Assembly: GCF_963921235.1 (NCBI RefSeq)
Contig: NC_086104.1
Span: 115,072,001-115,136,000 of the forward strand
From: Mobula hypostoma
Taxonomy: Eukaryota
Reading direction: 5' to 3'
Length of the DNA: 64,000 nt
Below, piece by piece: positions 3,827 to 30,330 of the stretch. Position 1 is the first letter of the stretch; each line of letters starts with the position of its first letter. Position numbers and translations under genes: made by a program. The notes beneath the pieces were generated by a model. It was not told the DNA's origin. It saw only the letters and a list, made by a program, of their open reading frames with translations, and did not search any database.

Positions 3827-3872
3827 ATGGGGACTTTCTGGTGCGCTATTTTCTTCATCCTTATTTGGAACA
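3827..3872 (+). CDS. Siglec-like gene exon 1 (signal peptide)
   Basis: ATG GGG ACT TTC TGG TGC GCT ATT TTC TTC ATC CTT ATT TGG AAC A|gtaact gives MGTFWCAIFFILIWN, 46 nt, phase 1. It splices in frame to the phase-1 V exon to give ...IWNTAVSEEW. It is the only hydrophobic phase-1 leader I found between the upstream paralogue and the V exon. Confidence 0.62.
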
Positions 3873-4069
3873 GTAACTGTCCATTTGTTGAAAAGCTGTG
3901 AGAGTTTTTTTTGTCACAGGCCAGTTCTATCTGACCAGAAACAGATCACAGATGGTTAAAGATGATTATATACTGGGAGATTCAATCATTCTTGTCGGTC
4001 AAACTGTTGCCTGCATCTTTGGCTGTCAAAGATCTCCCATGGCACCACGCATTCGAAAAGATAAGAGAT

Positions 4070-4295
4070 TAGTGATTAGATTGATTTGTCACGTGTACAT
4101 CGAAACATCAAAACCAGCAGTGAAATGCATCTGAAGATTATGCTGGGGAGGATGGCTGCCCACAAATGTCACCGCACATCTGGCACCAACATAGCATGCC
4201 TGCAACTTACTCGTTCCAACCCGTATGTCTTCGCAATGTAGGAGGAAATGAGAGCACACAGGAAACCCACGCAGTCACGGGGAGAAAGTACACAC
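4070..4295 (-). mobile_element. V-SINE/HE1-like SINE fragment
   Basis: The minus strand contains ttctccccgtgactgcgtgggtttcc, the characteristic V-SINE core. Confidence 0.6.
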
Positions 4296-4609
4296 AGTCA
4301 GGTTTATAATGGAGTTACATTCTGTGCTGCCTTACAATGCAGTGGACAAAGACCCTTCTAAACTCAGAAGAGTTTCTCCTAGGACAGACTTTCTGCTTTG
4401 TCCTCAACCCACCTGCTGTTTACCTAACTGAGTCATTTATGGACTATTGTTCATTCATTGTTTATGGACTAACTTTGCATCATCATTTACTAAGGAATTG
4501 TCATCAGGATGTAAATTTCAAATGAAGGTTTGTGGTCTCAGCAAAGGTTTAGGCCATTGAATGGAATTGGAGGGATAGGCAGTGGCACAGGAGGCAAAGG
4601 AAATGGTTT

Positions 4610-5384
4610 AGGGGCCAGAGAGGGGTTTACAGAGATAGGGAGGGGTGTATGAAGCAGCAGGGGGTTACAGAGATAGGGTAGGGTGTAGAGGCCAGTGGGT
4701 GTTACAGAGAAGGGAATGGTGTAGGAGGCAGAGACAGTTACAGAGAGGGAGAGGTGTAGGAGGCAGAGGGGGTAACAGGGATAGGAAGTGGTGTAGATAC
4801 CAGAGGGGGTTGCAGAGAGGGAGGGTGTTGGAGACAGAGATAGGGATGGGTGTAGAGACCAGAGGGGTTTACAGAGAAGGAAATGGTGTAGGGCTGGGTA
4901 GGTTACATAGGTAGGGAGGGATGTAGGAGGCAGAGGAGCTTACAGAGCTAGATAGGCGTGAGATACTAGAGGTGGTTAGAGAGAGAGGGAAGGGTGTAGG
5001 AGGCAGAGCGGTATTACAGAGTTAAGGAGAGATTTAGGACGCAGTGGGGATTACAGAGACAGGAAGATGTGTAGGGAACAGAGAGGGTTACATAGATAGG
5101 GAGAGGTGTAGGGGAGTCAGAGGGGGTTATAGAGATAGGGAGAGGTTTGTGAGACAGAAGGAGTTACAGAGACAGAGAGGGGTGTAGATACCAGAGGGGA
5201 TTACAGAAGTATTGGGGTGTGCAGGCCAGCGGGGCTTACAGAGAAGGGAATGGTGTAGGGGCTGAGGGGGTTACAGAGATAGGGAGAGTTGTAGGAGGCA
5301 GAGAGGGTTACAGAGATAGGGAGGGGTGTAGATTCTAGAGAGAGTTACATAATTAGAGAGAGGTTTGGAAGGCACAGAGGGTTA
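4610..5384. repeat. Degenerate G/A-rich minisatellite, ~35-38 bp unit
   Basis: Recurrent ggggttacagagatagggaggggtgtaggaggcaga; ttacag recurs at 4627, 4665, 4702 and 4738. Confidence 0.8.
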
Positions 5385-8300
5385 CAGTGTTGTGGAAAGT
5401 ACATGTGAGAGTGTGCATGTACACAATACGTGTGAGAGTGTGCATGCAGACAGTATGTGTGACAGTGTGCTTGCGGACAGTACGTGTCAGAGTGTGCAAG
5501 TGGACTCTACGTGTGACGGTGCATTTGGACAGTATGTCTGACAGTGTGCTTGTGAACAGTACGTGTGACAGTGTGCTTGTGGACAGTATGTGTCAGAGTG
5601 TGCAAGTGGACTCAACGTGTGACAGGGTGCATGTGGACAGTAGGTCTGACAGTGTGCTTGTGGACAGTACGTGTGAGAGTGTGCATGTGGACAGTACGTG
5701 TGACGGTGTGCTTGTGGACAGTACGTGTGAGAGTGTGCATGTGGACAGTACGTGTGACGGTGCATTTGGACAGTATGTCTGACAGTGTGCATGTGGACAG
5801 TACGTGTGAGAGTGTGCATGTGGACAGTACGTGTGACGGTGCATTTGGACAGTATGTCTGACAGTGTGCATGCAGACAGTATGTGTGAGAATGTGCATGT
5901 GGACAGTAGGTCTGACAGTGTGCATGTGGACAGTACGTGTGACAGTGTGCATGTGCACAGTACGTGTGACAGCGTGCATGTGGACAGTACGTGTGACAAT
6001 GTGCATGTGGACAGTACGTGTGACACTGCACGTGGACAGTACGTCTGAGAATGTGCATGTGAACAGTACGTGTGACAGCGTGCATGTGGACAGTATGTGT
6101 GACAGTGTGCATGTGGACAGTAGGTTTGACAGTGTGCTTATGAACAGTACGTGTGACAGTGGGAATGTGGACAGTACGTATAACAGTGTGCATGTGGACA
6201 GTATGTCTGAAAGTGTGCTTGTAGACAGTACGTGTGACAGTGTGCATGCGGACAGTACATGTGACAGTGTACATGCGGACAGTACATATGAGAGTGTGCC
6301 TGTGGACAGTATGTGTGACAGTGTGCATGTGGACAGTCGGTTTGCACTGTGCTTGTGGACAGTATGTGTGAGAGTGTACAAGTGGACAATACGTGTGAGA
6401 GTGTGCATGTGGACAGTACATATAATAGTGTGCATGTGGACAGTACGTGTGACAGTATGCATGCGGACAGTACGTGTGACAGTGTACATGTGGACAGTAG
6501 GTTTGACAGTGTGCTTATGAACAGTACGTGTGACAGTGGGAATGTGGACAGTATGTATAACAGTGTGCATGTGGACAGTATGTCTGAAAGTGTGCTTGTA
6601 GACAGTACGTGTGACAGTGTGCATGCGGACAGTACGTGTGACAGTGTACATGCGGACAGTACGTGTGACAGTATGCATGCGGACAGTACGTGTGACAGTG
6701 TACATGTGGACAGTAGGTTTGACAGTGTGCTTATGAACAGTACGTGTGACAGTGGGAATGTGGACAGTATGTATAACAGTGTGCATGTGGACAGTATGTC
6801 TGAAAGTGTGCTTGTAGACAGTACGTGTGACAGTGTGCATGCGGACAGTACGTGTGACAGTATGCATGCGGACAGTACGTGTGACAGTGTACATGCGGAC
6901 AGTACATATGAGAGTGTGCCTGTGGACAGTATGTGTGACAGTGTGCATGTGGACAGTCGGTTTGCACTGTGCTTGTGGACAGTACGTGTGAGAGTGTACA
7001 AGTGGAAAGCACATGTAACACTGCATGTGGACAGTATATGTGAAATTGTGCATGTGGACAGCACATGTGAGAGTGTGCCTGTGGACAATACGTGTGAGAA
7101 TGTGCAAGTGGACACCACGTGTGACAGTGTACATGCGGACAGTACGTGTGAGAATGTGCATGAGGACACTACGTGTGACAGCGTGCATGTGGACAGTATG
7201 TGTGACAGTGTGCCTGTAGATATTAGGTGTGAGAGTGTGCAAATGGACACTGCGTATGACAGTGTGATGTGGACAGTACATGTGACAATGCACGTGGACA
7301 GTATGCCTGAGAGTGTGCATGTGGACAGTACATATAATAGTGTGCATGTGGGCAATAAGTGTGACAGTGTACATGTGGACAGTACGTGTGACAGTGTGCA
7401 TGTGGACAGTATGTGTGAGAGTGTACAAGTGGACAATACGTGTGACAGTGTGCATGTGGACAGTATGTGTGAGAGTGTACAAGTGGACAATACGTGTGAG
7501 AGTGTGCATGTGGACAGTACATATAATAGTGTGCATGTGGACAGTACGTGTGACACTGTGCTTATGGGCAGTACGTGTGAGAGTGTTCAAGTGGACAGTA
7601 GATGTAACACTGTGCTTATGGACAGTACGTGTGAGAGTGTGCATGTGCACAGTACGTGTGACAGCGTGCATGTGGACAGTACGTGTGACAGTGTGCATGT
7701 GGACAGTACGTGTGACACTGCACGTGGACAGTACGTCTGAGAATGTGCATGTGAACAGTACGTGTGACAGCGTGCATGTGGACAGTATGTGTGACAGTGT
7801 GCATGTGGACAGTAGGTTTGACAGTGTGCTTATGAACAGTACGTGTGACAGTGGGAATGTGGACAGTACGTATAACAGTGTGCATGTGGACAGTATGTCT
7901 GAAAGTGTGCTTGTAGACAGTACGTGTGACAGTGTGCATGCGGACAGTACATGTGACAGTATGCATGCGGACAGTACGTGTGACAGTGTACATGCGGACA
8001 GTACATATGAGAGTGTGCCTGTGGACAGTATGTGTGACAGTGTGCATGTGGACAGTCGGTTTGCACTGTGCTTGTGGACAGTATGTGTGAGAGTGTACAA
8101 GTGGACAATACGTGTGAGAGTGTGCATGTGGACAGTACATATAATAGTGTGCATGTGGACAGTACGTGTGACAGTGTGCATGTGGACAGTACGTGTGACA
8201 CTGCACGTGGACATTATGTCTGAGAGTGTGCATGTGAACAGTACATATAATAGTGTGCATGTGGACAGTATGTGTGACAGTGTGCCTGTGGGCAGTATGT

Positions 8301-8396
8301 GTGAGAGTGGGCAAGTGGACACTAGATGTGACACTGTGCATGTCTGAGAGTATGCATGTGGACAGTATGATAACTGTGTGCATGTAGATAATACGT
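5385..8396. repeat. 27-bp minisatellite, left arm (~110 units)
   Basis: Consensus gtgcatgtggacagtacgtgtgacagt; 9-residue periodicity in all long ORFs. Confidence 0.97.
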
Positions 8397-9752
8397 TGTT
8401 ACGTACCACGTAACTGGGTTGCCAAACCAGCAGAAATAGATCACTCAGTTGGATTCTGGATTACTAGAACTAAGAAAGTTTTATTAAAGAAACAAGCAAC
8501 ACAGTAATCGAAAGGATAATAAATGCAACAGTTCAGCAATGATAAACACACATGTGCACAGAATTAAGATAACAGCATCAATCAAGCTTTATCGTTGTCT
8601 AGGGGTAAATGACCAAATTTCAAAGTGACACAAATTTCAGTCCAATTTAGTAGTTCAGTTCGCAGTAATCGTTGCCATGGTGATGGACAAAGTTGGGGGA
8701 GAGAGAGAGAACGGGAACGACTGATCATTCAGACACAGCTTCACTCACAGACCGGCGATATTTGCTCACAAGCAGTTTTTGGGCAGGTCCTTGGTGATGT
8801 CACCTGAGGTCACCGACTGTGACCCCTCCTCCAGATGCGGTCGATCCTCTGCAGTGAACCCGGCACCCAGGCAAGGGCGGACACACACCGGGTTCCCGCT
8901 GTTACGTACCCCGTAACTGGGTTGCCAAACCAGCAGAAATGGATCACTCAGTTGGAGTCTGGAGTACTAGAACTAAGAAAGTTTTATTAAAGAAACAAGC
9001 AACACAGTAATCGAAAGGATAATAAATGCAACAGTTCAGCGATGATAAACACACATGTGCACAGAATTAAGATAACAGCATCAATCAAGCTCTATCGTTG
9101 TCTAGGGGTAAATGACCAAATTTCAAAATGACTCAAAGATCAGTCCAGTTCAGTTCGCAGTAATCGTTGCCATGGCGATGGACAACGTGGGGGAAGAGAG
9201 AGATAGAACAGGAACAACTGATCATTCAGACACAGCTTCACTCACAGACCGGCGAGATGGCTCACAAGCAACTTTTGGGCGGGTCCTTGGTGATGTCACC
9301 TGAGGTCACCGACTGTGACCCCTCCTCCAGATGTGGTCGATCCTCTGCAGCGAACCCGGCACCCAGGCAAGGGCGGACACACACCGGTTTCCCGCTGATC
9401 GTACCTTTCCACCCTGGTCGTTGTCTGATACTTCTCACCCACTCGTGAGAGGCACACCGCTTCCAGGGTCTCGTTACCTCGGGTGGCGTGTGTCCCTGTC
9501 TTAGCGAACCTGTCCCTTTTTATCCCCCTGCTGGGGTATCGCCTGTCCATCACTTCAAACAGTTCAGGGTTCAAAGGGGGAGCCGCTCCAGACAGCTCTC
9601 TCTCCCACGTCCCTTCATTACACATCTCCAGACGCTGCTCCATTATTCCTTATCTCTCCTTCCCCTGAGGGCAGGTGGCAGACCAACTGCTGATGTCACT
9701 GATGCTAACCCAGGCCAGCAAACATCTTAATTTTATGTGTATTCTCGTAAAA
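8397..9752 (-). mobile_element. 3' LTR of a Gmr1-like LTR retrotransposon (8900-9752) with a 503-bp partial tandem duplicate (8397-8899)
   Basis: Both copies start tgttacgtacc (8397, 8900). The LTR ends cgtaaaa at 9752 (degenerate inverted terminus). An adjacent polypurine tract aaaggggggaag lies on the minus strand at 9753-9764. Confidence 0.8.
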
Positions 9753-11850
9753 CTTCCCCCCTTTAAGGATTTTTACCGGGAGGTAAAAATTACAAACATG
9801 AATACATTATTTGATACATACACAATATACATCTTTATCAGCTATTTGGCTAACACAGCGAGTTTGAAGCTGTCAACACCTTGACAGACAGTCATCACCT
9901 TGACAGACAGTCATCACCTTTTCTGTTCCTTTTACACGTGTTATTAATAATCCCTTAGACCAGGCTCCAACTCAGCAAACTTCATAGTGGCCAAAAACAC
10001 TGATGAATTGCGACCAATGTAACCTCTCATTTGGTTTTGTCCCGGACCACAATAACAAGGGTCGTCCCATTCCGACTCAGTTTTCTCTCGCAAGGGCTTA
10101 GTAGGAGGGGGACGGGTATTGACCGCAGAGTTATTGCAAAACTTCCTGCAGTACCCCACCATCTCCAAGAGCCCTCTGAGGGCCCTCTTGTCTGTCGGGG
10201 TTGGGAGGTCAGCGATAGCCTGCACTGTAGCTTGCATCGCTGCCAGCTGCCCCTGTGTCACCACAATTCCCAGGTAAGTGACCCCCGTGTGGCCGAATTC
10301 ATTTTTTTTCAAGGTTCACTATCAATCTGGCTTCAGACAGCCGTATTAAATTGCCAATACACACCTCTGTGTTCATCAGCCCTTTAGTCACTGAATTACT
10401 CATTATATATCGTGTTGTTTACTAGGCTGACCTATTGTAACAGACATCACCCAACGTCCCAGTTCTTTGCATTTCCTCGGGACAATCAAACACACGGGTG
10501 CGAGTCGTTTAATTACTCCTTCTAAAGATTCGCTTTGTTCGGGGATTAAGGGAGAGACCTTATCAGTAGACCTGACCAAAACAATAGCCTTCTCCCATCT
10601 GACCGATCCCATCCTAATCTTTTCAAAATGGTTTTTTCCTCTTATCAGGGGGCCCCTAGCTTCATTGATTTCCACGCTAACACCGACCAGGTTTGTTAGC
10701 ATATCAAAAGCCGGTGACCGTCTCAGTTCGCGTCGGTCATGATCAATAACATTTTTCCCCCTGGGCAGCCGGTAAATCTCTTTCATGATTCCACCAACTG
10801 TTTCCTCCAGCACCGCAAGATGTCCACCGGGGGGTACCTCGTGGGCCATGTTAAAAACCTCATCCCCATAACTCTTTTGCACCACCCCCCATTCCTCATC
10901 TGCGGGTACTGTACTTGATTTCCCTTTCTTCCTTAGCACTTCCTCATCCGCACAATAGCCTACTAGTTCCCTTGTCAAGGCTGTGTCAGAGAGAGCGGTC
11001 TCTGCAAAAACCATCAGCCCCTCGTCTCGCTCCTGCGTCTGCACAAATTATTTCCCGGCTACTGCTACGTCCGTCCCAGCTCCCTCACTACCACTTGTCT
11101 CACTACCCTCTTTCTTTCCATTTTCTACCCCCTTCTCGTACAAGGTTGGCAAAAACTGTTTCAGCTAAATTCACTATCGCGGGCGGGGCCTCAATGCTGG
11201 CAGGCTGACCTGTCAATCTCACGACTGGGAACACGATTCCCCCGGCGATGTCATTACCGAGCAAGACTTCCACGCCTTTCATCGGTAATTCGGGCCTCAC
11301 CCCGATCGTGACTAGTCCAGAGACCAGGTTGCTTTGTAAGTGTATCTGGTGCAAAGGGACTGACTCTGTCCCTTCCCCAACACCTTTGACCTCTACCTCC
11401 CCAGTCTGGGTCTCTGAGCTAAACTCTAATACACTCTTCAGTATTAGTGACTGACACGCTCCCGTGTCTCTCCAGATCCGCACTGGAACTGGTTTTAACC
11501 CCTCCTTCACTGACACCAGTCCGGCCGAGATAAACCTGGACTTTTTCAGACCTGTCCTTCCCTAGCGGTTCGCTTAACAGCTCGATACAGCCATTCAAAA
11601 TTTCCGCTTTTCCTTTCCCCGTCTCCTTCCTTGGGGCAAAGCACCTGGACGCAAAGTGTCCGGCTTTCCCACAATGATAACAGACGACCCCAGGAGACTT
11701 CCTACCAGACTGCTCCCGGTCTACCTTATCCTTTTCACTAGTCCCCGGCTTACTTTCTGACTTTTCCGGCGGACTCTCCCCGCCGTCCTGACTACCCTTC
11801 TGGTAGCCTTTACTCGGGGCAAACTTCATTTTATGCGTCAACGCATACTC
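9753..11850 (-). mobile_element. Internal region of a deleted Gmr1-like Ty3/Gypsy element (gag CCHC knuckle, protease, partial integrase, partial RT)
   Basis: Minus-strand motifs in order: CYHCGKAGHFASRC, IWRDTGACQS (aspartic protease), MAHEVPPGGHL (integrase HHCC part), EFGHTGVTYLGIVV (RT C-terminal part). Frameshifted and 5'-truncated. Confidence 0.8.
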
Positions 11851-14800
11851 AGTAGGTTTGACAGTGTGTTTGTGGACAGTACGGGTGAGAGTGTACAAAT
11901 GGAAAGTACATGTAACACTCTGCATGTGGACAGTACATGTGATTGTGTGCATGTGGACAGTACGTGTGACAGTGTGCATGTGGACAGTACGTGTGAGAGT
12001 GTACAAGTGGAAAGTACATGTAACACTCTGCATGTGGACAGTACATGTGACTGTGTGCATGTGGACAGTACGTGTGAGAATGTGCATGTGGACAGTACGT
12101 GTGACAGTGTGCATGTGGACAGTACGTGTGACAGAGTGCATGTGGACAGTACATGTGAGAGTGTGCATGTGGACAGTACGTGTGACAGTGTGCATGTGGA
12201 CAGTACGTGTGACAGAGTGCATGTGGACAGTATGTGTGAGAGTGTGCAAGTGGTCACTGTGTATGACAGTGTGCATGTGGACAGTATGTGTGAGAGTGTA
12301 CAAATGGAAAGTACATGTAACACTCTGCATGTGGACAGTACATGTGACTGTGTGCATGTGGACAGTACGTGTGAGAGTGTGCATGTGGACAGTACGTGTG
12401 ACAGAGTGCATGTGGACAGTATGTGTGAGAGTGTGCATGTGGACAGTACGTGTGACAGAGTGCAAATGGACATTACGAGTGAGAGTTTGCCTGTGGACAG
12501 TATGTGTGAGAGTGTGCATGTGAACAGTATGTTTGACAGTGTACATGTGGACAGTACGTGTGAGAGTGTGCATGTGCACAGTACGTTTGCAGTGTGCCTG
12601 TGGACAGTACGTGTAGGAGTGTGCAAATCGACACTGAGTATGACTGTGTGCATGTGGACAGTATGTGTGACAGTGTGCATGTGTACAGTACGTGTGACAG
12701 TGTGCATGTGCACAGTACGTTTGACAGTGTGCATGTGGACAGTATGTGTGACAGTGTGCCAGTGGACAGTACGTGTGGCAGTGTGCATGTGTACAGTACG
12801 TGTGACAGTGTGCATGTGGACAGTACGTGTGGCAGTGTGCATGTGGACAGTATGTGTGACAGTGTGCATGTGGACCATACGTGTGACAATGCACGTGGAC
12901 AGTATGTCTGACTGTGTGCATGCGGACAGTACGTGTGACACTGCACGTGGACAGTATGTCTGAGAGTGTGCATGAGGACAATACGTGTAACAGTGTGCCT
13001 GTGGACAGTACGTGTGAGAGTGTCCATGTGGACAGTACGTATGACAGTGTCCATGTGGACAGTACATGTGACAGTGTGCAAATGGACAAGACGTGTGAGA
13101 GTGTGCATGTGGACAGTACATATAACAGTGTGCATGTGAACAGTATGTTTGACAGTGTACATGTGGACAGTACGTGTGAGAGTGTGCATGTGCACAGTAC
13201 GTTTGCAGTGTGCCTGTGGACAGTACGTGTGGGAGTGTGCAAATCGACACTGAGTATGACTGTGTGCAGTGGACAGTAGGTTTGACAGTGTGCATGTGGA
13301 CAGTACGTGTGACAGTGTGCATGTGGACAGTACATGTGACTGTGTGCATGTGGACAGTACGTGTGACAGTGTGCATGTGGACAGTACGTGTGAGAGTGTG
13401 CATGTGGACAGTACGTGTGACAGTGTGCATGTGGACAGTACGTGTGAGAGTGTGCATGTGGACAGTACGTGTGACAGTGTGCATGTGGACAGTATGTGTG
13501 AGAGTGTGCATGTGGACAGTAGGTTTGACAGTGTGCATGTGGACAGTACGTGTGACAGTGTGCATGTGGACAGTACGTGTGACAGTGTGCATGTGGACAG
13601 TATGTGTGAGAGTGTGCATGTGGACAGTATGTGTGACAGTGTGCATGTGGACAGTATGTGTGAGAGTGTGCATGTGGACAGTATGTGTGAGAGTGTACAT
13701 GTGAACAGTACGTGTGACAGTGTGCATGTGAACAGTACGTGTGACAGTGTGCATGTGGACAGTATGTGTGAGAGTGTGCATGTGGACAGTACGTGTGACA
13801 GTGTGCATGTGGACAGTATGTGTGAGAGTGTGCATGTGGACAGTATGTGTGACAGTGTGCATGTGGACAGTATGTGTGAGAGTGTGCATGTGGACAGTAT
13901 GTGTGACAGTGTGCATGTGAACAGTACGTGTGACAGTGTGCATGTGGACAGTATGTGTGAGAGTGTGCATGTGGACAGTATGTGTGAGAGTGTACAAATG
14001 GAAAGTACATGTAACACTTTGCATGTGGACAGTACATGTGACTGTGTGCATGTGGACAGTACGTGTGAGAGTGTGCATGTGGACAGTATGTGTGACAGTG
14101 TGCATGCGGACAGTATGTCTGAAAGTGTGCATGTGGACAGTATGTGTGAGAGTGTGCATGTGGACAGTACGTGTGACAGAGTGCATGTGGACAGTATGTG
14201 TGAGAGTGTGCATGTGGACAGTACGTGTGACAGAGTGCATGTGGACAGTATGTGTGAGAGTGTGCATGTGGACAGTACGTGTGACAGAGTGCATGTGGAC
14301 AGTATGTGTGAGAGTGTGCATGTGGACAGTATGTGTGAGAGTGCGCAAGTGGACATTACGAGTGAGAGTTTGCCTGTGAACAGTATGTTTGACAATGTAC
14401 ATGTGGACAGTACGTGTGAGAGTGTGCATGTGCACAGTACGTTTGCAGTGTGCCTGTGGACAGTACGTGTAGGAGTGTGCAAATCGACACTGAGTATGAC
14501 TGTGTGCATGTGAACAGTATGTGTGACAGTGTGCATGTGAACAGTATGTGTGACAGTGTGCATGTGGACAGTAGGTTTGACAGTGTGCATGTGAACAGTA
14601 CGTGTGACAGTGTGCATGTGGACAGTACATGTGGCAGTGTGCATGTGGACAGTATGTGTGACAGTGTGCATGTGGACCATACGTGTGACAATGCATGTGG
14701 ACAGTATGTGTGGCAGTGTGCATGTGGACAGTATGTGTGACAGTGTGCATGTGGACCATACGTGTGACAATGCATGTGGACAGTATGTGTGGCAGTGTGC

Positions 14801-17800
14801 ATGTGGACAGTATGTCTGACTGTGTGCATGCGGACAGTACGTGTGACACTGCACGTGGACAGTATGTCTGAGAGTGTGCATGAGGACAATACGTGTAACA
14901 GTGTGCCTGTGGACAGTACGTGTGAGAGTGTCCATGTGGACAGTACATGTGACAGTGTGCAAATGGACAAGACGTGTGAGAGTGTGCATGTGGACAGTAC
15001 ATATAACAGTGTGCATGTGAACAGTATGTTTGACAGTGTACATGTGGACAGTACGTGTGAGAGTGTGCATGTGCACAGTACGTTTGCAGTGTGCCTGTGG
15101 ACAGTACGTGTGGGAGTGTGCAAATCGACACTGAGTATGACTGTGTGCATGTGGACAGTACGTGTGACAGAGTGCATGTGGACAGTATGTGTGACAGTGT
15201 GCATGTGGACAGTACATGTGACTGTGTGCATGTGGACAGTACGTGTGAGAGTGTGCATGTGGACAGTACGTGTGACAGAGTGCATGTGGACAGTACGTGT
15301 GACAGTGTGCATGTGGACAGTACATGTGACTGTGTGCATGTGGACAGTACGTGTGAGAGTGTGCATGTGGACAGTACGTGTGACAGTGTGCATGTGGACA
15401 GTACATGTGACTGTGTGCATGTGGACAGTACGTGTGAGAGTGTGCATGTGGACAGTACGTGTGAGAGTGTGCATGTGGACAGTACGTGTGACAGTGTGCA
15501 TGTGGACAGTACGTGTGACAGTGTGCATGTGGACAGTACGTGTGACAGTGTGCATGTGGACAGTACGTTTGAAAGTGTGCATGTGGACAGTATGTCTGAG
15601 AGTGTGCATGTGGACAGTACATGTGAGAGTGTGCATGTGGACAGTACGTGTGAGAGTGTGCATGTGGACAGTACGTGTGACAGCGTGCATGTGGACAGTA
15701 TGTGTGACAGTGTGCATGCGGACAGTATGTCTGAGAGTGTGCATGTGGACAGTATGTCTGAGAGTGTGCATGTGGACAGTACGTGTGAGAGTGTGCCTGT
15801 GGACACTACATGTGAGAATGTGCAAATGAACACTGCGTATGACAGCGTACATGCCAACAGTACGTGTGACAGTGTGCATGCCAACAGTACGTGTGACAGT
15901 GTGCATGTGGACAGTACGTGTAATAGTTTGCATGTGGACAGTATGTGTGACAGTGTGCCTGTGGACACTACATGTGAGAATGTGCAAATGAACACTGCGT
16001 ATGACAGCGTACATGTGGACGGTACGTGTGACACTGCACGTGGACAGTATGTCTGAGAGTGTGCATGTGGACAGTACGTGTGACAGTGTGCATGTGGACA
16101 GTACGTGTGAGAGTGTGCCTGTGGACAGTACGTGTGACAGTGTGCCTGTGGACAGTATGTGTGAGAGTGTGCATGTGGACAGTATGTGTGAGAGTGTACA
16201 TGTGAACAGTACGTGTGACAGTGTGCATGTGGACAGTACGTGTGACAGTGTGCATGTGGACAGTACGTGTGAGAGTGTACATGTGAACAGTACGTGTGAC
16301 AGTGTGCATGTGGACAGTACGTGTGACAGTGTGCCTGTGGACAGTACGTGTGAGAGTGTGCATGTGGACAGTACGTGTGAGAGTGTGCATGTGGACAGTA
16401 TGTGTGACAGTGTGCATGTGAACAGTACGTGTGACAGTGTGCATGTGGACAGTATGTGTGAGAGTGTGCATGTGGACAGTATGTGTGACAGTGTGCATGT
16501 GAACAGTACGTGTGACAGTGTGCATGTGGACAGTATGTGTGAGAGTGTACAAATGGAAAGTACATGTAACACTTTGCATGTGGACAGTACATGTGACTGT
16601 GTGCATGTGGACAGTACGTGTGAGAGTGTGCATGTGGACAGTATGTGTGACAGTGTGCATGCGGACAGTACGTGTGACAGAGTGCATGTGGACAGTATGT
16701 GTGAGAGTGTGCATGTGGACAGTACGTGTGACAGTGTGCATGCCAACAGTACGTGTGACAGTGTGCATGTGGACAGTACGTGTAATAGTTTGCATGTGGA
16801 CAGTATGTGTGACAGTGTGCATGTGGACAGTATGTGTGAGAGTGTACAAATGGAAAGTACATGTAACACTTTGCATGTGGACAGTACATGTGACTGTGTG
16901 CATGTGGACAGTACGTGTGAGAGTGTGCATGTGGACAGTATGTGTGACAGTGTGCATGCGGACAGTATGTCTGAAAGTGTGCATGTGGACAGTATGTGTG
17001 AGAGTGTGCATGTGGACAGTACGTGTGACAGAGTGCATGTGGACAGTATGTGTGAGAGTGTGCATGTGGACAGTACGTGTGACAGTGTGCATGCCAACAG
17101 TACGTGTGACAGTGTGCATGTGGACAGTACGTGTAATAGTTTGCATGTGGACAGTATGTGTGACAGTGTGCCTGTGGACACTACATGTGAGAATGTGCAT
17201 ATGAACACTGCGTATGACAGCGTACATGTGGACGGTACGTGTGACACTGCACGTGGACAGTATGTCTGAGAGTGTGCATGTGGACAGTATATATAATAGT
17301 GTGCATGTGGACAATATGTGTGAGAGTGTGCATGTGGACAGTATATATAATAGTGTGCATGTGGACAATATGTGTGACAGTGTGCATGTGGACAGTACGT
17401 GTGACAGTGTGCCTGTGGACAGTACGTGTGACAGTGTGCCTGTGGACAGTACATGTGACTGTGTGCCTGTGGACAGTACGTGTGAGAGTGTGCATGTGGA
17501 CAGTACGTGTGACAGTGTGCATGTGGACAGTATGTGTGAGAGTGTGCATGTGGACAGTATGTGTGAGAGTGTACATGTGAACAGTACGTGTGACAGTGTG
17601 CATGTGGACAGTATGTGTGAGAGTGTGCATGTGGACAGTATGTGTGACAGTGTGCATGTGAACAGTACGTGTGACAGTGTGCATGTGGACAGTATGTGTG
17701 AGAGTGTGCATGTGAACAGTACGTGTGACAGTGTGCATGTGGACAGTACGTGTGAGAGTGTACATGTGGACAGTATGTGTGAGAGTGTGCATGTGGACAG

Positions 17801-20800
17801 TATGTGTGAGAGTGTACAAATGGAAAGTACATGTAACACTTTGCATGTGGACAGTACATGTGACTGTGTGCATGTGGACAGTACGTGTGAGAGTGTGCAT
17901 GTGGACAGTATGTGTGAGAGTGTGCATGTGGACAGTACGTGTGACAGTGTGCATGTGGACAGTACGTGTGAGAGTGTGCATGTGGACAGTACGTGTGAGA
18001 GTGTGCATGTGGACAGTACGTGTGACAGAGTGCATGTGGACAGTATGTGTGAGAGTGTGCATGTGGACAGTACGTGTGACAGAGTGCAAATGGACATTAC
18101 GAGTGAGAGTTTGCCTGTGGACAGTATGTGTGAGAGTGTGCATGTGAACAGTATGTTTGACAGTGTACATGTGGACAGTACGTGTGAGAGTGTGCATGTG
18201 CACAGTACGTTTGCAGTGTGCCTGTGGACAGTACGTGTAGGAGTGTGCAAATCGACACTGAGTATGACTGTGGGCATGTGGACAGTATGTGTGACAGTGT
18301 GCATGTGTACAGTACGTGTGACAGTGTGCATGTGCACAGTACGTTTGACAGTGTGCATGTGGACAGTATGTGTGACAGTGTGCCAGTGGACAGTACGTGT
18401 GGCAGTGTGCATGTGTACAGTACGTGTGACAGTGTGCATGTGGACAGTACGTGTGGCAGTGTGCATGTGGACAGTATGTGTGACAGTGTGCATGTGGACC
18501 ATACGTGTGACAATGCACGTGGACAGTATGTCTGACTGTGTGCATGCGGACAGTACGTGTGACACTGCACGTGGACAGTATGTCTGAGAGTGTGCATGAG
18601 GACAATACGTGTAACAGTGTGCCTGTGGACAGTACGTGTGAGAGTGTCCATGTGGACAGTACGTATGACAGTGTCCATGTGGACAGTACATGTGACAGTG
18701 TGCAAATGGACAAGACGTGTGAGAGTGTGCATGTGGACAGTACATATAACAGTGTGCATGTGAACAGTATGTTTGACAGTGTACATGTGGACAGTACGTG
18801 TGAGAGTGTGCATGTGCACAGTACGTTTGCAGTGTGCCTGTGGACAGTACGTGTGGGAGTGTGCAAATCGACACTGAGTATGACTGTGTGCAGTGGACAG
18901 TAGGTTTGACAGTGTGCATGTGGACAGTACGTGTGACAGTGTGCATGTGGACAGTACATGTGACTGTGTGCATGTGGACAGTACGTGTGACAGTGTGCAT
19001 GTGGACAGTACGTGTGAGAGTGTGCATGTGGACAGTACGTGTGAGAGTGTGCATGTGGACAGTACGTGTGAGAGTGTGCATGTGGACAGTACGTGTGACA
19101 GTGTGCATGTGGACAGTATGTGTGAGAGTGTGCATGTGGACAGTAGGTTTGACAGTGTGCATGTGGACAGTACGTGTGACAGTGTGCATGTGGACAGTAC
19201 GTGTGACAGTGTGCATGTGGACAGTATGTGTGAGAGTGTGCATGTGGACAGTATGTGTGACAGTGTGCATGTGGACAGTATGTGTGAGAGTGTGCATGTG
19301 GACAGTATGTGTGAGAGTGTACATGTGAACAGTACGTGTGACAGTGTGCATGTGAACAGTACGTGTGACAGTGTGCATGTGGACAGTATGTGTGAGAGTG
19401 TGCATGTGGACAGTACGTGTGACAGTGTGCATGTGGACAGTATGTGTGAGAGTGTGCATGTGGACAGTATGTGTGACAGTGTGCATGTGGACAGTATGTG
19501 TGAGAGTGTGCATGTGGACAGTATGTGTGACAGTGTGCATGTGAACAGTACGTGTGACAGTGTGCATGTGGACAGTATGTGTGAGAGTGTGCATGTGGAC
19601 AGTATGTGTGAGAGTGTACAAATGGAAAGTACATGTAACACTTTGCATGTGGACAGTACATGTGACTGTGTGCATGTGGACAGTACGTGTGAGAGTGTGC
19701 ATGTGGACAGTATGTGTGACAGTGTGCATGCGGACAGTATGTCTGAAAGTGTGCATGCGGACAGTACGTGTGAGAGTGTGCATGTGGACAGTATGTGTGA
19801 CAGTGTGCATGCGGACAGTATGTCTGAAAGTGTGCATGTGGACAGTATGTGTGAGAGTGTGCATGTGGACAGTACGTGTGACAGAGTGCATGTGGACAGT
19901 ATGTGTGAGAGTGTGCATGTGGACAGTACGTGTGACAGAGTGCATGTGGACAGTATGTGTGAGAGTGTGCATGTGGACAGTACGTGTGACAGAGTGCATG
20001 TGGACAGTATGTGTGAGAGTGTGCATGTGGACAGTATGTGTGAGAGTGCGCAAGTGGACATTACGAGTGAGAGTTTGCCTGTGAACAGTATGTTTGACAA
20101 TGTACATGTGGACAGTACGTGTGAGAGTGTGCATGTGCACAGTACGTTTGCAGTGTGCCTGTGGACAGTACGTGTAGGAGTGTGCAAATCGACACTGAGT
20201 ATGACTGTGTGCATGTGAACAGTATGTGTGACAGTGTGCATGTGAACAGTATGTGTGACAGTGTGCATGTGGACAGTAGGTTTGACAGTGTGCATGTGAA
20301 CAGTACGTGTGACAGTGTGCATGTGGACAGTACATGTGGCAGTGTGCATGTGGACAGTATGTGTGACAGTGTGCATGTGGACCATACGTGTGACAATGCA
20401 TGTGGACAGTATGTGTGGCAGTGTGCATGTGGACAGTATGTGTGACAGTGTGCATGTGGACCATACGTGTGACAATGCATGTGGACAGTATGTGTGGCAG
20501 TGTGCATGTGGACAGTATGTCTGACTGTGTGCATGCGGACAGTACGTGTGACACTGCACGTGGACAGTATGTCTGAGAGTGTGCATGAGGACAATACGTG
20601 TAACAGTGTGCCTGTGGACAGTACGTGTGAGAGTGTCCATGTGGACAGTACATGTGACAGTGTGCAAATGGACAAGACGTGTGAGAGTGTGCATGTGGAC
20701 AGTACATATAACAGTGTGCATGTGAACAGTATGTTTGACAGTGTACATGTGGACAGTACGTGTGAGAGTGTGCATGTGCACAGTACGTTTGCAGTGTGCC

Positions 20801-23800
20801 TGTGGACAGTACGTGTGGGAGTGTGCAAATCGACACTGAGTATGACTGTGTGCATGTGGACAGTACGTGTGACAGAGTGCATGTGGACAGTATGTGTGAC
20901 AGTGTGCATGTGGACAGTACATGTGACTGTGTGCATGTGGACAGTACGTGTGAGAGTGTGCATGTGGACAGTACGTGTGACAGAGTGCATGTGGACAGTA
21001 CGTGTGACAGTGTGCATGTGGACAGTACATGTGACTGTGTGCATGTGGACAGTACGTGTGAGAGTGTGCATGTGGACAGTACGTGTGACAGTGTGCATGT
21101 GGACAGTACATGTGACTGTGTGCATGTGGACAGTACGTGTGAGAGTGTGCATGTGGACAGTACGTGTGAGAGTGTGCATGTGGACAGTACGTGTGACAGA
21201 GTGCATGTGGACAGTAAGTGTGACAGTGTGCATGTGGACAGTACGTGTGACAGTGTGCATGTGGACAGTATGTCTGAGAGTGTGCATGTGGACAGTACAT
21301 GTGAGAGTGTGCATGTGGACAGTACGTGTGAGAGTGTGCATGTGGACAGTACGTGTGACAGCGTGCATGTGGACAGTATGTGTGACAGTGTGCATGCGGA
21401 CAGTATGTCTGAGAGTGTGCATGTGGACAGTATGTCTGAGAGTGTGCATGTGGACAGTACGTGTGAGAGTGTGCCTGTGGACACTACATGTGAGAATGTG
21501 CAAATGAACACTGCGTATGACAGCGTACATGCCAACAGTACGTGTGACAGTGTGCATGCCAACAGTACGTGTGACAGTGTGCATGTGGACAGTACGTGTA
21601 ATAGTTTGCATGTGGACAGTATGTGTGACAGTGTGCCTGTGGACACTACATGTGAGAATGTGCAAATGAACACTGCGTATGACAGCGTACATGTGGACGG
21701 TACGTGTGACACTGCACGTGGACAGTATGTCTGAGAGTGTGCATGTGGACAGTACGTGTGACAGTGTGCATGTGGACAGTACGTGTGAGAGTGTGCCTGT
21801 GGACAGTACGTGTGACAGTGTGCCTGTGGACAGTACATGTGACTGTGTGCCTGTGGACAGTACGTGTGAGAGTGTGCATGTGGACAGTACGTGTGACAGT
21901 GTGCATGTGGACAGTATGTGTGAGAGTGTGCATGTGGACAGTATGTGTGAGAGTGTACATGTGAACAGTACGTGTGACAGTGTGCATGTGGACAGTACGT
22001 GTGACAGTGTGCATGTGGACAGTACGTGTGAGAGTGTACATGTGAACAGTACGTGTGACAGTGTGCATGTGGACAGTACGTGTGACAGTGTGCCTGTGGA
22101 CAGTACGTGTGAGAGTGTGCATGTGGACAGTACGTGTGAGAGTGTGCATGTGGACAGTACGTGTGAGAGTGTGCATGTGGACAGTATGTGTGACAGTGTG
22201 CATGTGAACAGTACGTGTGACAGTGTGCATGTGGACAGTATGTGTGAGAGTGTGCATGTGGACAGTATGTGTGACAGTGTGCATGTGAACAGTACGTGTG
22301 ACAGTGTGCATGTGGACAGTATGTGTGAGAGTGTACAAATGGAAAGTACATGTAACACTTTGCATGTGGACAGTACATGTGACTGTGTGCATGTGGACAG
22401 TACGTGTGAGAGTGTGCATGTGGACAGTATGTGTGACAGTGTGCATGCGGACAGTACGTGTGACAGAGTGCATGTGGACAGTATGTGTGAGAGTGTGCAT
22501 GTGGACAGTACGTGTGACAGTGTGCATGCCAACAGTACGTGTGACAGTGTGCATGTGGACAGTACGTGTAATAGTTTGCATGTGGACAGTATGTGTGACA
22601 GTGTGCATGTGGACAGTATGTGTGAGAGTGTACAAATGGAAAGTACATGTAACACTTTGCATGTGGACAGTACATGTGACTGTGTGCATGTGGACAGTAC
22701 GTGTGAGAGTGTGCATGTGGACAGTATGTGTGACAGTGTGCATGCGGACAGTATGTCTGAAAGTGTGCATGTGGACAGTATGTGTGAGAGTGTGCATGTG
22801 GACAGTACGTGTGACAGAGTGCATGTGGACAGTATGTGTGAGAGTGTGCATGTGGACAGTACGTGTGACAGTGTGCATGCCAACAGTACGTGTGACAGTG
22901 TGCATGTGGACAGTACGTGTAATAGTTTGCATGTGGACAGTATGTGTGACAGTGTGCCTGTGGACACTACATGTGAGAATGTGCATATGAACACTGCGTA
23001 TGACAGCGTACATGTGGACGGTACGTGTGACACTGCACGTGGACAGTATGTCTGAGAGTGTGCATGTGGACAGTATATATAATAGTGTGCATGTGGACAA
23101 TATGTGTGAGAGTGTGCATGTGGACAGTATATATAATAGTGTGCATGTGGACAATATGTGTGACAGTGTGCATGTGGACAGTACGTGTGACAGTGTGCCT
23201 GTGGACAGTACGTGTGACAGTGTGCCTGTGGACAGTACATGTGACTGTGTGCCTGTGGACAGTACGTGTGAGAGTGTGCATGTGGACAGTACGTGTGACA
23301 GTGTGCATGTGGACAGTATGTGTGAGAGTGTGCATGTGGACAGTATGTGTGAGAGTGTACATGTGAACAGTACGTGTGACAGTGTGCATGTGGACAGTAT
23401 GTGTGAGAGTGTGCATGTGGACAGTATGTGTGACAGTGTGCATGTGAACAGTACGTGTGACAGTGTGCATGTGGACAGTATGTGTGAGAGTGTGCATGTG
23501 AACAGTACGTGTGACAGTGTGCATGTGGACAGTACGTGTGAGAGTGTACATGTGGACAGTATGTGTGAGAGTGTGCATGTGGACAGTATGTGTGAGAGTG
23601 TACAAATGGAAAGTACATGTAACACTTTGCATGTGGACAGTACATGTGACTGTGTGCATGTGGACAGTACGTGTGAGAGTGTGCATGTGGACAGTATGTG
23701 TGACAGTGTGCATGCGGACAGTATGTCTGAAAGTGTGCATGTGGACAGTATGTGTGAGAGTGTGCATGTGGACAGTACGTGTGACAGAGTGCATGTGGAC

Positions 23801-24656
23801 AGTATGTGTGAGAGTGTGCATGTGGACAGTACGTGTGACAGTGTGCATGCCAACAGTACGTGTGACAGTGTGCATGTGGACAGTACGTGTAATAGTTTGC
23901 TTGTGGACAGTATGTGTGACAGTGTGCCTGTGGACACTACATGTGAGAATGTGCAAATGAACACTGCGTATGACAGCGTACATGTGGACGGTACGTGTGA
24001 CACTGCACGTGGACAGTATGTCTGAGAGTGTGCATGTGGACAGTATATATAATAGTGTGCATGTGGACAGTACGTGTGACAGTGTGCATGTTGACAGTAC
24101 GTGTGACACTGTGTATGTGGACAGTATGTGTGACAGTGTGCCTGTGGACAGTACGTGTGAGAGTGTGCATGTGGACAGTACGTGTGACAGTGTGCATGTG
24201 GACAGTACGTGTGACAGTGTGCCTGTGGACAGTACGTGTGAGAGTGTGCCTGTGGACAGTATGTCTGAGAGTGTGCCTGTGGACAGTACGTGTGACAGTG
24301 TGCCTGTGGACAGTACATGTGACAGTGTGCCTGTGGACAGTACGTGTGACAGTGTGCATGTGGACAGTACGTGTGACAGTGTGCCTGTGGACAGTATGTC
24401 TGAGAGTGTGCATGTGGACAGTATGTGTGAGAGTGTGCATGTGGACAGTACGTGTGAGAGTGTACAAATGGAAAGTACATGTAACACTCTGCATGTGGAC
24501 AGTACATGTGACTGTGTGCATGTGGACAGTATGTGTGACAGTGTGCATGTGGACAGTACGTGTGACAGTGTGCATGTGGACAGTATGTGTGAGAGTGTGC
24601 AAGTGGAGAGTACGTGTGACACTGTGTATGTGGACAGTACGTGTGACAGTGTGCAT
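11851..24656. repeat. 27-bp minisatellite, right arm (~475 units) with higher-order repeats
   Basis: Same consensus as the left arm. Rare variant markers recur at offsets of 5624-5786 bp. Confidence 0.97.
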
Positions 24657-25422
24657 CTGCTCTGTATCTGCTCTTTCCGCTCATCAATATCTCCTTTAAG
24701 GGTCTCTCATTCCTACAATTCTCTACACCTCCAAGATCTGCGTTAATTGCAGTGTTGGATATTGTTCTCTGTGCACCCTAAGCAGCAGTATGTATGAGAA
24801 GCAAAGCCATGCTTCTGGTTGCAGTCCCTTGACAACTCCACTCTTCGCTTCACTATGGTCGAAGCTTACAACCTCACTGAGACATTGTTGTAATCAGGAA
24901 TTTTGTTGTCTGTTTTATATTCCATAAATCCTTCCATAAAACATTCACCTCTGAAATTAGTATTGCTACCCTTTGTAAATGCTGAGTAGTGTTTGAACTG
25001 AGTGTCACTCTGAGACCACTGAATCTTCTGCTTCTTATTGACAAATTTGAAACCACTGGGCACCTTTGATCCCAGTCCAAAGTTGATTGGTTGGTGAGGT
25101 CCTCCTGATGCCATTATCATGGCCTTTTCCAACCCCTACTGCCACAGGGTGCCATGGAGAGACCCTCTAGAGCTCTGGATTTGCCCATCAGGGAAATGTG
25201 TTGGATGGGTCATGATGTTATTGCCAGAGAACAAGTCATGGAACATACATATAAAGAGCAAGGTCAGCGTATTTCCACAATTGTCTTTTGCTGTGATATC
25301 CAATCTCTGTATGCAACACAAACGATGCCCGGATTCCCATCCCTGCATGATTGAATCAAGAGATTCCAGAACCTACAAAGTCTTGTCTTTCCAATGTCAA
25401 ATATTCTTCCATCTCTCCCCAG

Positions 25423-25788
25423 CTGCAGTGTCGGAAGAGTGGAGAGCTGACACTCCACGAGATGTGACGGCGCAGAGGGGTTTGTGTGCCCGGATTCCAT
25501 GCCACTACAGTTATCCATCACAGTTGAACAATAAACCACGGACAGCAGTCTGGATGAATGATGAAAAATACAATGTTAAGTCAATCGCCTTTCACTCTGA
25601 GGATCACAGAAGTCAGGCAGGGAGGTTTCACTATCGGACCTGGCTGTCTGGTAACTTGAAAGACGGTGATTGTTCACTGGTTATAAACGATATCATGTTT
25701 GGAGATGAAGGTCCTTATCATTTCAGAATTGAATTTCCCAACCAGTATCATTACAGTTTCTACCCTGTAACACAGCTCTACGTTTCTG
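25423..25788 (+). CDS. Siglec-like gene exon 2: V-set Ig domain
   Basis: Boundaries ctctccccag|ct and tct g|gtaggt; 366 nt, phase 1-1. Reads EEWRA..GLCARIPCHY..W..GDCSLVI..EGPYHFRIE..YSF. It has the Siglec-type CxxxxC plus E-strand Cys, no F-strand Cys, and a conserved F-strand Arg (FRIE). Confidence 0.9.
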
Positions 25789-26177: not shown

Positions 26178-26471
26178 ATTTCACAGATAAACCCTCGATA
26201 TTTGCTGATGAAGTGGTTGAAGGAAAGCCCAAGGACATAATCTGCGCCTTCAACACCACATGTGATAAGGCAATACCCACGTTAACATGGGCCCTTCCCA
26301 CCAACGTATCAGCATTAAAGTCAGACAGTGTAACTCAGCAGGGTGACACTCTGATATACACTTCTGTTCTGACCCTGACCCCAACACTTAAACACCACGG
26401 ACAGAATCTCACCTGCAGAGTCAGATATCCAGCCACTTCATCGGAGCAGACCATCACACTAAACGTACAGA
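26178..26471 (+). CDS. Siglec-like gene exon 3: C2-set Ig domain
   Basis: Boundaries ctattag|at and cag a|gtaagt; 294 nt, phase 1-1. Reads DFTDKPSI..IICAFNTTCDK..LTW..QNLTCRV, with the extra Cys expected for the Siglec inter-domain disulfide. Confidence 0.9.
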
Positions 26472-26577
26472 GTAAGTACAGAGATAGTTTATTATCTTTG
26501 AAAGCAACAAAGCACAGTTTACACAGCAAGATCTCACAGACTGACTTGGTTGATCAGACCACTTGTGGAGCATTTTG

Positions 26578-28585: not shown

Positions 28586-28703
28586 GACAAAGGTCACAGG
28601 CAACACTAGTCATCCTATTGGCTGCTGCAGCAGGGGCTGTATTCCTGATCATCTCATTGGTTGTGATTTGCTTCATTCTCAGGACACGATGCAGAACTAG
28701 CAG
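28586..28703 (+). CDS. Siglec-like gene exon 4: transmembrane
   Basis: Boundaries tggtag|ga and agc ag|gtgggt; 118 nt, phase 1-2. Reads QRSQATLVILLAAAAGAVFLIISLVVICFILRTRCRTS, an uncharged TM followed by basic residues. Confidence 0.85.
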
Positions 28704-29522: not shown

Positions 29523-29598
29523 ACCACCAGCAGATGCATCAGGACCTGTATCAGAGAAGAAATCAAGAGTGATTCCAATTAGAAAGAGACAGAAGAAG
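29523..29598 (+). CDS. Siglec-like gene exon 5: cytoplasmic
   Basis: Boundaries ctctgctcttag|a and aag|gtgagt; 76 nt, phase 2-0. Reads (R)PPADASGPVSEKKSRVIPIRKRQKK. Confidence 0.82.
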
Positions 29599-29777: not shown

Positions 29778-30222
29778 TTGACTTGACTTGACTTTATTAA
29801 GCCTAAAGCAAGGCCAACGTACAGCAGCACTCCACTGCTCTAGATGCAGCTGCAGTGGCCACACATTAAGCAACCATAATCAATCCAGCACATTCTGGGA
29901 TTAACAGTCCCTCTAGCAGTGTGATGCTTTCTCAGCAGTGCCCTTCCACACAACAACAGCCCCTCAGCATTGTCCTTGGATTACATGGATTCCTTTTCAT
30001 GCTTGCGACATGGTTGGTGGGTCTTGAACATAGGCTCTGCACTCCAAGAGGCAGGCTGGTGCTTCTCATTGAGTCCAGTGTAACCAGACACTGAAATCAT
30101 ATAATCAAACCCAACCCAGACTGCCAACATCATCTGTGGGCAGAATAATTCCACTGGGGCTCAAACAAACCATATCGTGATCCTGCTAATTGTCCCTCTG
30201 TTCATCTCCATAGCTGTCACAG

Positions 30223-30330
30223 AAGAATGTGAAAAATGATTCGAAAGTCACACCAAACCATGACTATCAAGTTTATTGCATCTATGAAAACTGCCGGGTT
30301 GATGAGAACGCTATATATGCAAATATATAA
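30223..30330 (+). CDS. Siglec-like gene exon 6: terminal, tyrosine motifs
   Basis: gtcacag|AAG acceptor; reads KNVKNDSKVTPNHDYQVYCIYENCRVDENAIYANI*. Exons total 46+366+294+118+76+108 = 1008 nt, or 335 aa plus stop. Confidence 0.82.
   Translation, partial: KNVKNDSKVTPNHDYQVYCIYENCRVDENAIYANI

What the first reader, a model, noticed from the sequence alone, without database searches (positions are those of the whole stretch)
3873..25422. A 21.5-kb first intron occupied by ~16 kb of 27-bp minisatellite plus an LTR relic
Seen: the best leader exon (3827-3872) is separated from the V exon by ~585 copies of one 27-mer, a second minisatellite and a retrotransposon, while the other introns are 0.4-2.1 kb. 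Inference: a giant VNTR between signal peptide and ligand-binding exon could vary between individuals and alter or silence expression, or seed rearrangement in an immune cluster.
Basis: partly seen in the sequence, partly recalled or inferred. Interest (0 to 1): 0.7.

Follow-up and report, generated by a model that had tools for sequence, protein, structure and literature searches.

The report
Giant minisatellite upstream of ray Siglec exon
A real 16-kb array of one 27-base unit lies in front of the sugar-binding exon of a devil-ray Siglec-type immune receptor gene.

Summary
There are 586 units of a 27-mer: 5391-8393 (111 units) and 11850-24656 (475 units). They are split by a truncated minus-strand LTR-retroelement relic (8394-11849) and preceded by a 37-bp minisatellite (4619-5387).

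The large block holds a recent tandem duplication of about 5.7 kb. The two copies are about 99.3% identical and their indels are mostly whole multiples of 27.

Downstream lies an intact CD33-related Siglec-like gene (V, C2, TM and two tail exons). Its introns are 0.4-2.1 kb, as stated.

RNA contigs of a sister species match Mobula birostris XP_072106002. They join the V exon at acceptor 25429, not 25423, to exons lying outside 24600-25428. Two RefSeq first exons of that orthologue map to window 4166-4283 and 4509-4527, just upstream of the arrays. So the arrays are probably intronic.

The proposed leader (3827-3872) is unsupported:
- its donor is weak (ACA|GTAACT);
- it does not resemble the family's conserved leader (MIGKSYFLLSLLQ);
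- it is absent from all four orthologue isoforms;
- the window species' RNA runs hold none of its words;
- a candidate this good is expected by chance about 0.15-0.2 times.

This is an ordinary intronic VNTR in a weakly expressed, possibly decaying receptor gene. An effect on expression is untested. The scan has noted large minisatellites elsewhere in this genome.

The parts
3827..3872 (+). It is unverified and not homologous to the family leader.
   Evidence: no RNA words
4166..4283 (+). Repeat-like stretch (by eye a SINE; a weak second copy lies at 2823-2945). It is homologous to the first coding exon of M. birostris isoform X2 (38 of 39 aa). In this window GA stands where the in-frame donor GT would be.
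4509..4527 (+). Homologue of the coding part of the M. birostris isoform X3 first exon (MYISNE). Here it reads ATG TAA, so it is non-coding. The donor AAG|GTTTGT is intact.
4619..5387 (.). 37-bp purine-rich minisatellite, about 20 copies, 66% matches.
5391..8393 (.). 27-bp minisatellite, left block: 111 units, the more decayed of the two.
8394..11849 (-). Truncated LTR-retroelement relic that splits the array. It has two tandem LTR-like copies of about 500 bp (8394-9397) and decayed ORF remnants. No LTR is present at its right end.
11850..24656 (.). 27-bp minisatellite, right block: 475 units. It contains a tandem higher-order duplication of about 5.7 kb (12261-18144 against 17885-23930, about 99.3% identical, with indels of 81, 27, 81 and 27 nt).
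25154..25262 (+). Proximal alternative first coding exon (MERPSRALD...KEQ, no signal peptide, donor AAG|GTCAGC). It is homologous to the first exon of M. birostris isoforms X1/X4. None of the four RNA runs laid covers it.
25423..25788 (+). V-set (Siglec) exon with tandem acceptors at 25423 and 25429. Sister-species RNA uses 25429. The FRIE arginine is conserved.
26178..26471 (+). C2-set exon. It is intact here but skipped in sister-species transcripts, and no run laid covers it.
28586..28703 (+). Transmembrane exon.
29523..29598 (+). Cytoplasmic exon 1.
30214..31076 (+). Last exon: tyrosine-motif tail, stop codon at 30328-30330, and a 3' UTR with AATAAA near 31056.

Best explanation
A real 27-bp minisatellite of about 15.8 kb (586 units) lies in the 5' part of a CD33-related Siglec-like receptor gene of a devil ray. 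Earlier notes of this scan name the species as Mobula hypostoma.

The array grew by unequal exchange. It was split by an LTR retroelement that later decayed, and its larger half was recently doubled by a tandem duplication of about 5.7 kb.

The array is most likely a neutral passenger inside a 5' intron of about 21 kb. In the sister species, transcripts start at non-signal-peptide first exons just upstream of the arrays, one of them repeat-like (window 4166-4283 and up to 4527). They splice to the V exon at 25429 and skip the C2 exon.

The family's conserved leader exon is absent from the 23 kb upstream of the V exon. The gene therefore seems to have lost its canonical start. It is weakly expressed and may be decaying.

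Shown: the repeat anatomy, the gene model from the V exon to the stop codon, and the splice joints in the sister species. Inferred: that the sister species has the array in the same place, and that the window species uses the same upstream exons.
For: Array anatomy.

LTR relic.

Gene identity: closest proteins are elasmobranch CD33-like Siglecs; Pfam gives V-set/Ig_CD22 and C2-set_2; the V domain aligns to sialoadhesin with the FR(F/I)E arginine conserved.

Splice evidence: GT..AG joints 25788>28586, 28703>29523 and 29598>30214 appear in RNA contigs.

Species match: applying the run's listed differences to the V exon reproduces the M. birostris XP_072106002 residues over the covered 5' two-thirds.

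Upstream exons: contigs X8#21 and X11#9 begin the V exon at 25427/25429 and carry 189 and 131 upstream letters not found in 24600-25428. Their alignment start points fit exons ending ...GAAG (window 4527) and ...GGGGA (window 4283). Run X11 holds 3 of 52 sampled words of 3760-4300.

Orthologue first exons map to 4166-4283 and 4509-4527. The orthologous gene spans 29.4 kb.

No relic of the MIGKSYFLLSLLQ-type leader scores above background.
Against: No read was seen to cross the array in the window species. There, RNA covers only the 3' part of the V exon at depth 2-3, unspliced, plus the last two exons.

The genomic DNA of the sister species could not be fetched, so the presence of the array there rests only on gene span.

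In this window the X2-type donor reads GA and the X3-type ATG is followed by TAA, so these exons may not function in the same way here.

RefSeq isoforms X1/X4 use a proximal first exon downstream of the array.

The letters of the loose ends at 25429 were not printed, so the upstream exons were assigned by inference.
Confidence: 0.5

Rival explanations
1. 3827-3872 is the true signal-peptide exon. Intron 1 is 21.55 kb and is spliced 3872>25423, giving a 338-aa V-C2-TM receptor with a tyrosine-motif tail.
For: It is the most hydrophobic phase-1 ATG...GT candidate upstream. Its Kozak context is good (G at -3 and +4). The conceptual CDS is open from this ATG to the stop codon. It is the only upstream exon in this window that would give a type I receptor a signal peptide, because the X2- and X3-type exons cannot code here.
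Against: The donor ACA|GTAACT scores -0.8 on my rough matrix, against 3.3-8.3 for the gene's four internal donors; 16% of all GT dinucleotides do as well. It does not resemble the leader conserved from sharks to rays. None of the four orthologue isoforms has it. The window species' RNA runs hold 0.00 of the 3760-4300 words. About 2-3 equally hydrophobic candidates occur per 95 kb of non-array sequence, so about 0.15-0.2 are expected by chance in the 7 kb searched.
Confidence: 0.25
2. The arrays are intergenic, or lie upstream of the promoter, in this species. Transcription starts at the proximal exon 25154-25262 or at the V exon, and the locus is a leaderless pseudogene or non-coding transcript.
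For: Orthologue isoforms X1/X4 start at the homologue of 25154-25262, which has the best donor of the candidate first exons (3.0). Window-species RNA shows no upstream words. No protein of this gene appeared from the window species' annotation in the search.
Against: None of the four RNA runs covers 24988-25375. The sister-species contigs carry upstream sequence from beyond 24600. The ORF from V exon to stop codon is intact, with good splice sites.
Confidence: 0.2
3. Part of the array length is an assembly artefact. The two 5.7-kb blocks would then be the two haplotypes of one block, falsely placed in tandem.
For: The blocks are about 99.3% identical and differ by whole-unit indels. That is the kind of difference expected between alleles.
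Against: There are no gaps (no N) in the window. The blocks are flanked by further array sequence of the same family. The same pattern is what a recent unequal crossover produces.
Confidence: 0.1

Closest known systems
TRACT, the 30-bp intronic VNTR of human CACNA1C (PMC13131567; bioRxiv 10.1101/2025.09.15.676436)
   Same: Both are tandem arrays of a roughly 30-bp unit, kilobases to tens of kilobases long, inside an intron of a protein-coding gene (TRACT is 3-30+ kb according to the abstracts).
   Different: TRACT has documented length and sequence polymorphism and experimental links to expression. Here there are no population data and no expression effect. The host gene is a weakly expressed immune receptor, and the intronic status itself is inferred.
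CD33-related Siglecs of cartilaginous fishes (RefSeq predictions such as M. birostris XP_072106002 and M. hypostoma 'CD33-like' P0014)
   Same: The V-set domain has the conserved arginine and cysteine pattern, followed by a C2-set domain, a TM segment and a tyrosine-motif tail. It is 54-64% identical to most family members found (paralogues and other elasmobranchs; two partial matches reach 53-57% over three-quarters of the domain) and 87% identical (V domain) to the presumed orthologue.
   Different: It lacks the family's conserved MIGKSYFLLSLLQ-type leader exon. The orthologue's models have no signal peptide and skip the C2 exon.
Minisatellite-swollen LTR-like insertion noted elsewhere in this genome (scan note s1-141961)
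   Same: Both are arrays of about 500 copies and 16-20 kb, built from a short unit, in the same genome.
   Different: Here the array flanks (3300-4618 and 24657-25422) have no other copy in the window and show no sign of being halves of one mobile element. The LTR relic is inserted into the array; it is not the array's parent.

Membership tests
Minisatellite / VNTR | Head-to-tail copies of a 10-100 bp unit | tested here: met
   586 units of 27 bp, 547 of them exactly 27 nt
Minisatellite / VNTR | Copy number varies between alleles or individuals | not testable with these tools
   Only the source animal's DNA runs hold the locus fully, and the one read-laying run was used on RNA. The only hint is historical: whole-unit indels between the two 5.7-kb blocks.
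Intronic repeat (part of a primary transcript, removed by splicing) | Transcripts join exons on both sides of the array | tested here: inconclusive
   Sister-species contigs splice into 25429 from sequence outside 24600-25428, and orthologue first exons map to 4166-4527. No joint across the array was seen directly, and none at all in the window species.
Siglec (sialic-acid-binding Ig-like lectin), CD33-related | N-terminal V-set domain with the conserved F-strand arginine | tested here: met
   Pfam V-set 3.8e-10 and Ig_CD22 1.1e-8. YHFRIE aligns to YNFRFE of sialoadhesin, E 1.2e-13. That this arginine is the sialic-acid contact comes from my own knowledge.
Siglec (sialic-acid-binding Ig-like lectin), CD33-related | C2-set domain(s), TM segment and cytoplasmic tyrosine motifs | tested here: met
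   C2-set_2 1.6e-7. The TM segment and the tail ...DYQVYCIYENCRVDENAIYANI are present. The distal motif has Ala at -2, so it is not a textbook ITIM.
Siglec (sialic-acid-binding Ig-like lectin), CD33-related | Cleavable signal peptide on a separate leader exon | tested here: inconclusive
   No homologue of the family leader was found. There is one non-homologous candidate with a weak donor.
Siglec (sialic-acid-binding Ig-like lectin), CD33-related | Binds sialylated glycans | not testable with these tools
   This needs a binding assay.
LTR retrotransposon | LTRs flanking gag-pol | tested here: inconclusive
Two LTR-like copies lie in tandem at one end only. The ORFs are decayed; the only family hit is a sub-threshold protease match (RVP, E 0.099), and two other ORFs gave no Pfam hit.

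The most novel reading that the evidence does not exclude
The expansion of the array, together with the LTR insertion, displaced or destroyed the family's ancestral leader exon. That forced the use of repeat-derived, non-signal first exons across a 21-kb GU-rich intron. Array length would then act as a polymorphic dial or off-switch for this Siglec, as TRACT is proposed to do for CACNA1C.
Probability: 0.08. Interest if true: 0.55.

Novelty: new member of a known kind. Interest (0 to 1): 0.25.

Why it matters
If the array is polymorphic and affects splicing or transcription, it would be a natural expression variant of an immune lectin receptor in an elasmobranch. As it stands, it is one more large intronic or upstream minisatellite in a repeat-rich genome. 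Its main use is as a caution for gene annotation: the leader of this gene is unresolved, and the orthologue's RefSeq models lack a signal peptide.

Tried and rejected
1. Coding repeat. The array carries ORFs of up to 2,332 aa. All three minus-strand frames and two plus-strand frames are open for more than 1,000 aa, as expected from an AC/GT-rich unit with almost no stop triplets, so I rejected a coding role.

2. Array born inside a mobile element (lead from s1-141961). The flanks have no second copy in the window apart from a TE fragment at 3392-3651. Not supported.

3. Known RNA family in 1-32000. No Rfam match at gathering score.

4. Fetching orthologue or paralogue DNA. Two look-ups found no gene on record, and two returned 'no DNA: file too large'. 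I could not compare the array or the leader across species at DNA level.

5. Relic of the canonical leader. Regex and BLOSUM scans found nothing above background. The FFHLSP stretch just before 25423 is the translated polypyrimidine tract, not a fused leader.

6. The bacterial-type promoter scan does not apply to this eukaryotic gene and was ignored.

7. RNA of the window species. It was too shallow to show any 5' exon.
Full report
**Observation**

Tandem Repeats Finder reports one 27-bp family in two blocks. The first is 5391-8343 (110 copies, 80% matches). The second is 11850-24656 (476 copies, 85% matches). Their consensus units are rotations of each other.

A separate 37-bp purine-rich array lies at 4619-5387. 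GC skew is +0.4 to +0.47 across both 27-mer blocks.

My own tiling with the consensus TGTGGACAGTACGTGTGACAGTGTGCA gives 111 + 475 = 586 units, 547 of them exactly 27 nt. CpG decay (ACGT to ATGT or ACAT) is the commonest kind of variant. The window contains no N.

The interval 3873-25422 is 21,550 nt, and 73% of it is the 27-mer.

**Structure of the array**

Exact 60-mers recur at offsets of 5624, 5678, 5705, 5759 and 5786 nt, which differ by multiples of 27.

A local alignment shows 12261-18144 repeated at 17885-23930. The core has 43 mismatches in about 5,860 aligned bases (about 99.3% identity) and four indels of 81, 27, 81 and 27 nt.

So the large block was recently doubled by a tandem duplication of roughly 210 units, and unit numbers have changed since. 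This is the signature of unequal exchange. It could instead be two haplotypes falsely joined in the assembly, which I could not test.

**The spacer**

8394-11849 begins with two tandem LTR-like copies of about 500 bp (8394-8896 and 8897-9397, 93-96% identical in segments), starting TGTTACGTACC.

It continues with decayed minus-strand ORFs. Pfam gave only a sub-threshold retroviral protease hit (RVP, E 0.099) on 11106-11561 and nothing on the other two ORFs tested. By eye they look like retroelement pol remnants, but that is not a tested result.

There is no LTR at the right end. The array resumes at almost the same phase of the 27-mer at which it broke off, which fits an insertion into an array that already existed. 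'LTR relic' is a fair description.

**The gene**

Downstream lies an intact gene with these parts:
- V exon 25423/25429-25788
- C2 exon 26178-26471
- TM exon 28586-28703
- cytoplasmic exon 29523-29598
- last exon 30214-30330 (stop codon), with a 3' UTR running to about 31076 behind an AATAAA

Pfam gives V-set, Ig_CD22 and C2-set_2. The V domain aligns to sialoadhesin domain 1 (E 1.2e-13) with YHFRIE over YNFRFE.

The nearest proteins are elasmobranch 'CD33-like' and other Siglec predictions at 54-64% identity. One protein, Mobula birostris XP_072106002, is 87% identical in the V domain and about 97% identical elsewhere. Earlier notes of this scan name the genome as Mobula hypostoma, which fits these hits.

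An upstream paralogue ends at 974-1915 (note s1-143705).

**RNA evidence**

Reads were laid on 24600-30400, with two runs of the window species (A) and two of a species about 2% diverged (B). All four runs proved to be RNA, because they show GT..AG joints.

In species B:
- One contig joins 25788>28586 (skipping the C2 exon), then 28703>29523 and 29598>30214.
- Applying B's listed differences to the V exon reproduces the XP_072106002 residues over the covered 5' two-thirds. B therefore carries the M. birostris form of this gene.
- Two B contigs start the V exon at 25427 and 25429 and carry 189 and 131 more upstream letters that lie nowhere in 24600-25428.
- No run covers 24988-25375.

The first exon used in B is therefore beyond 24600, inside or upstream of the array.

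**Which upstream exons**

The four RefSeq isoforms of the orthologue begin as follows:
- X2: MSPHIWHQ...AVTG
- X3: MYISNE
- X1/X4: MKGATERPSRALD...KEQ

In the window these map to 4166-4283 (38 of 39 aa), 4509-4527 (one mismatch in 21 nt) and 25154-25262.

The first two lie just upstream of the 37-bp array. An exon ending ...GAAG explains why contig X8#21 aligns from 25427. An exon ending ...GGGGA explains why X11#9 aligns from 25429. Run X11 holds 3 of 52 sampled words of 3760-4300.

The orthologous gene spans 29.4 kb, against about 27 kb here from 3827-4166 to 31076, so its 5' intron is of similar size.

These steps are inference. The loose letters were not printed, and the orthologue's DNA could not be fetched.

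**The proposed leader**

3827-3872 is the most hydrophobic phase-1 candidate and gives an open 338-aa conceptual protein. The case against it has five parts:
- Its donor ACA|GTAACT scores -0.8 on a simple matrix, against 3.3-8.3 for the gene's four internal donors. Sixteen percent of all GT dinucleotides do as well.
- Equally hydrophobic ATG...GT candidates occur 2-3 times per 95 kb of non-array sequence, so 0.15-0.2 are expected in the 7 kb searched.
- The family leader is strongly conserved from sharks to rays (MIGKSYFLLSLLQ|AVVSEEW). Nothing upstream, including 3827-3872, resembles it above background.
- No orthologue isoform has it.
- The A-species RNA runs hold 0.00 of the words of 3760-4300, although expression there is too low for this to count for much.

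In its favour, it is the only upstream exon that could code for a start here. In this window the in-frame X2-type donor reads GA, and the X3-type ATG is followed by TAA. I put it at about 25%.

**Mechanism**

Most likely the array is a neutral product of replication slippage and unequal exchange, carried in a long 5' intron of a gene that has lost its canonical leader and is weakly expressed.

On the transcribed strand each unit offers two ACAG| acceptor-like and two |GT donor-like motifs without a pyrimidine tract. Splicing would therefore have to ignore more than a thousand decoys. That is plausible but not shown.

An effect on expression, as proposed for the 30-bp CACNA1C intronic VNTR (PMC13131567; 10.1101/2025.09.15.676436), is possible but has no evidence here.

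**Verdict**

The repeat anatomy is confirmed. Intronic status is probable, but through different first exons from the one proposed. The proposed leader is unsupported and the functional claims are untested. This is a new example of a known kind and of low to moderate interest.

Noticed in passing
window 25519-25568: Thirteen of the 15 nucleotide differences listed in the V exon between this window and the sister-species transcripts lie within 50 nt. They change SQLNNKPRTA to LHVDNKPWDG, which by my alignment to sialoadhesin lies around the C-C' region. The rest of the gene is about 97-99% identical. This looks like a gene-conversion tract or strong diversifying selection at the ligand-binding face.
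   Followed up: partly
window 25788>28586 (C2 exon 26178-26471): Sister-species transcripts and all four RefSeq isoforms skip the C2 exon, although it is intact with good splice sites in this window. No run laid covers it.
   Followed up: partly
window 25626-25816: In both RNA runs of the window species, low-depth contigs run 28 nt past the V-exon donor and then break at exactly 25816, followed by 32 and 99 unlike letters. 25817-18 is CT (AG on the minus strand). This could be an antisense exon, a paralogue or other haplotype, or a structural difference. It remains unexplained.
   Followed up: no
window 26540-26930 and 27900-28290: Transposon fragments in the C2-TM intron collect enormous summed RNA depth (up to about 10^5) in all four runs. 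They belong to highly transcribed repeat families, also seen at 424-713 and 3392-3651.
   Followed up: no
window 974-1915: This is the 3' end of an upstream Siglec-like paralogue with the tail ...EYQDIDIYANCQPAESSIYGNI, which has a better ITIM-like SIYGNI than this gene's AIYANI.
   Followed up: partly
window 40595-41357: A 109-bp unit is repeated 7 times at 98% identity inside a minus-strand retroelement region. A 39-bp x13 array lies at 36539-37059 inside an integrase-like ORF (the latter already noted as s1-144489).
   Followed up: no
window 11841-24777, minus strand: The array gives stop-free ORFs of 1,000-2,300 aa (CPHAHSHTY repeats) in all three minus frames. This is a composition artefact that could mislead gene finders.
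   Followed up: yes
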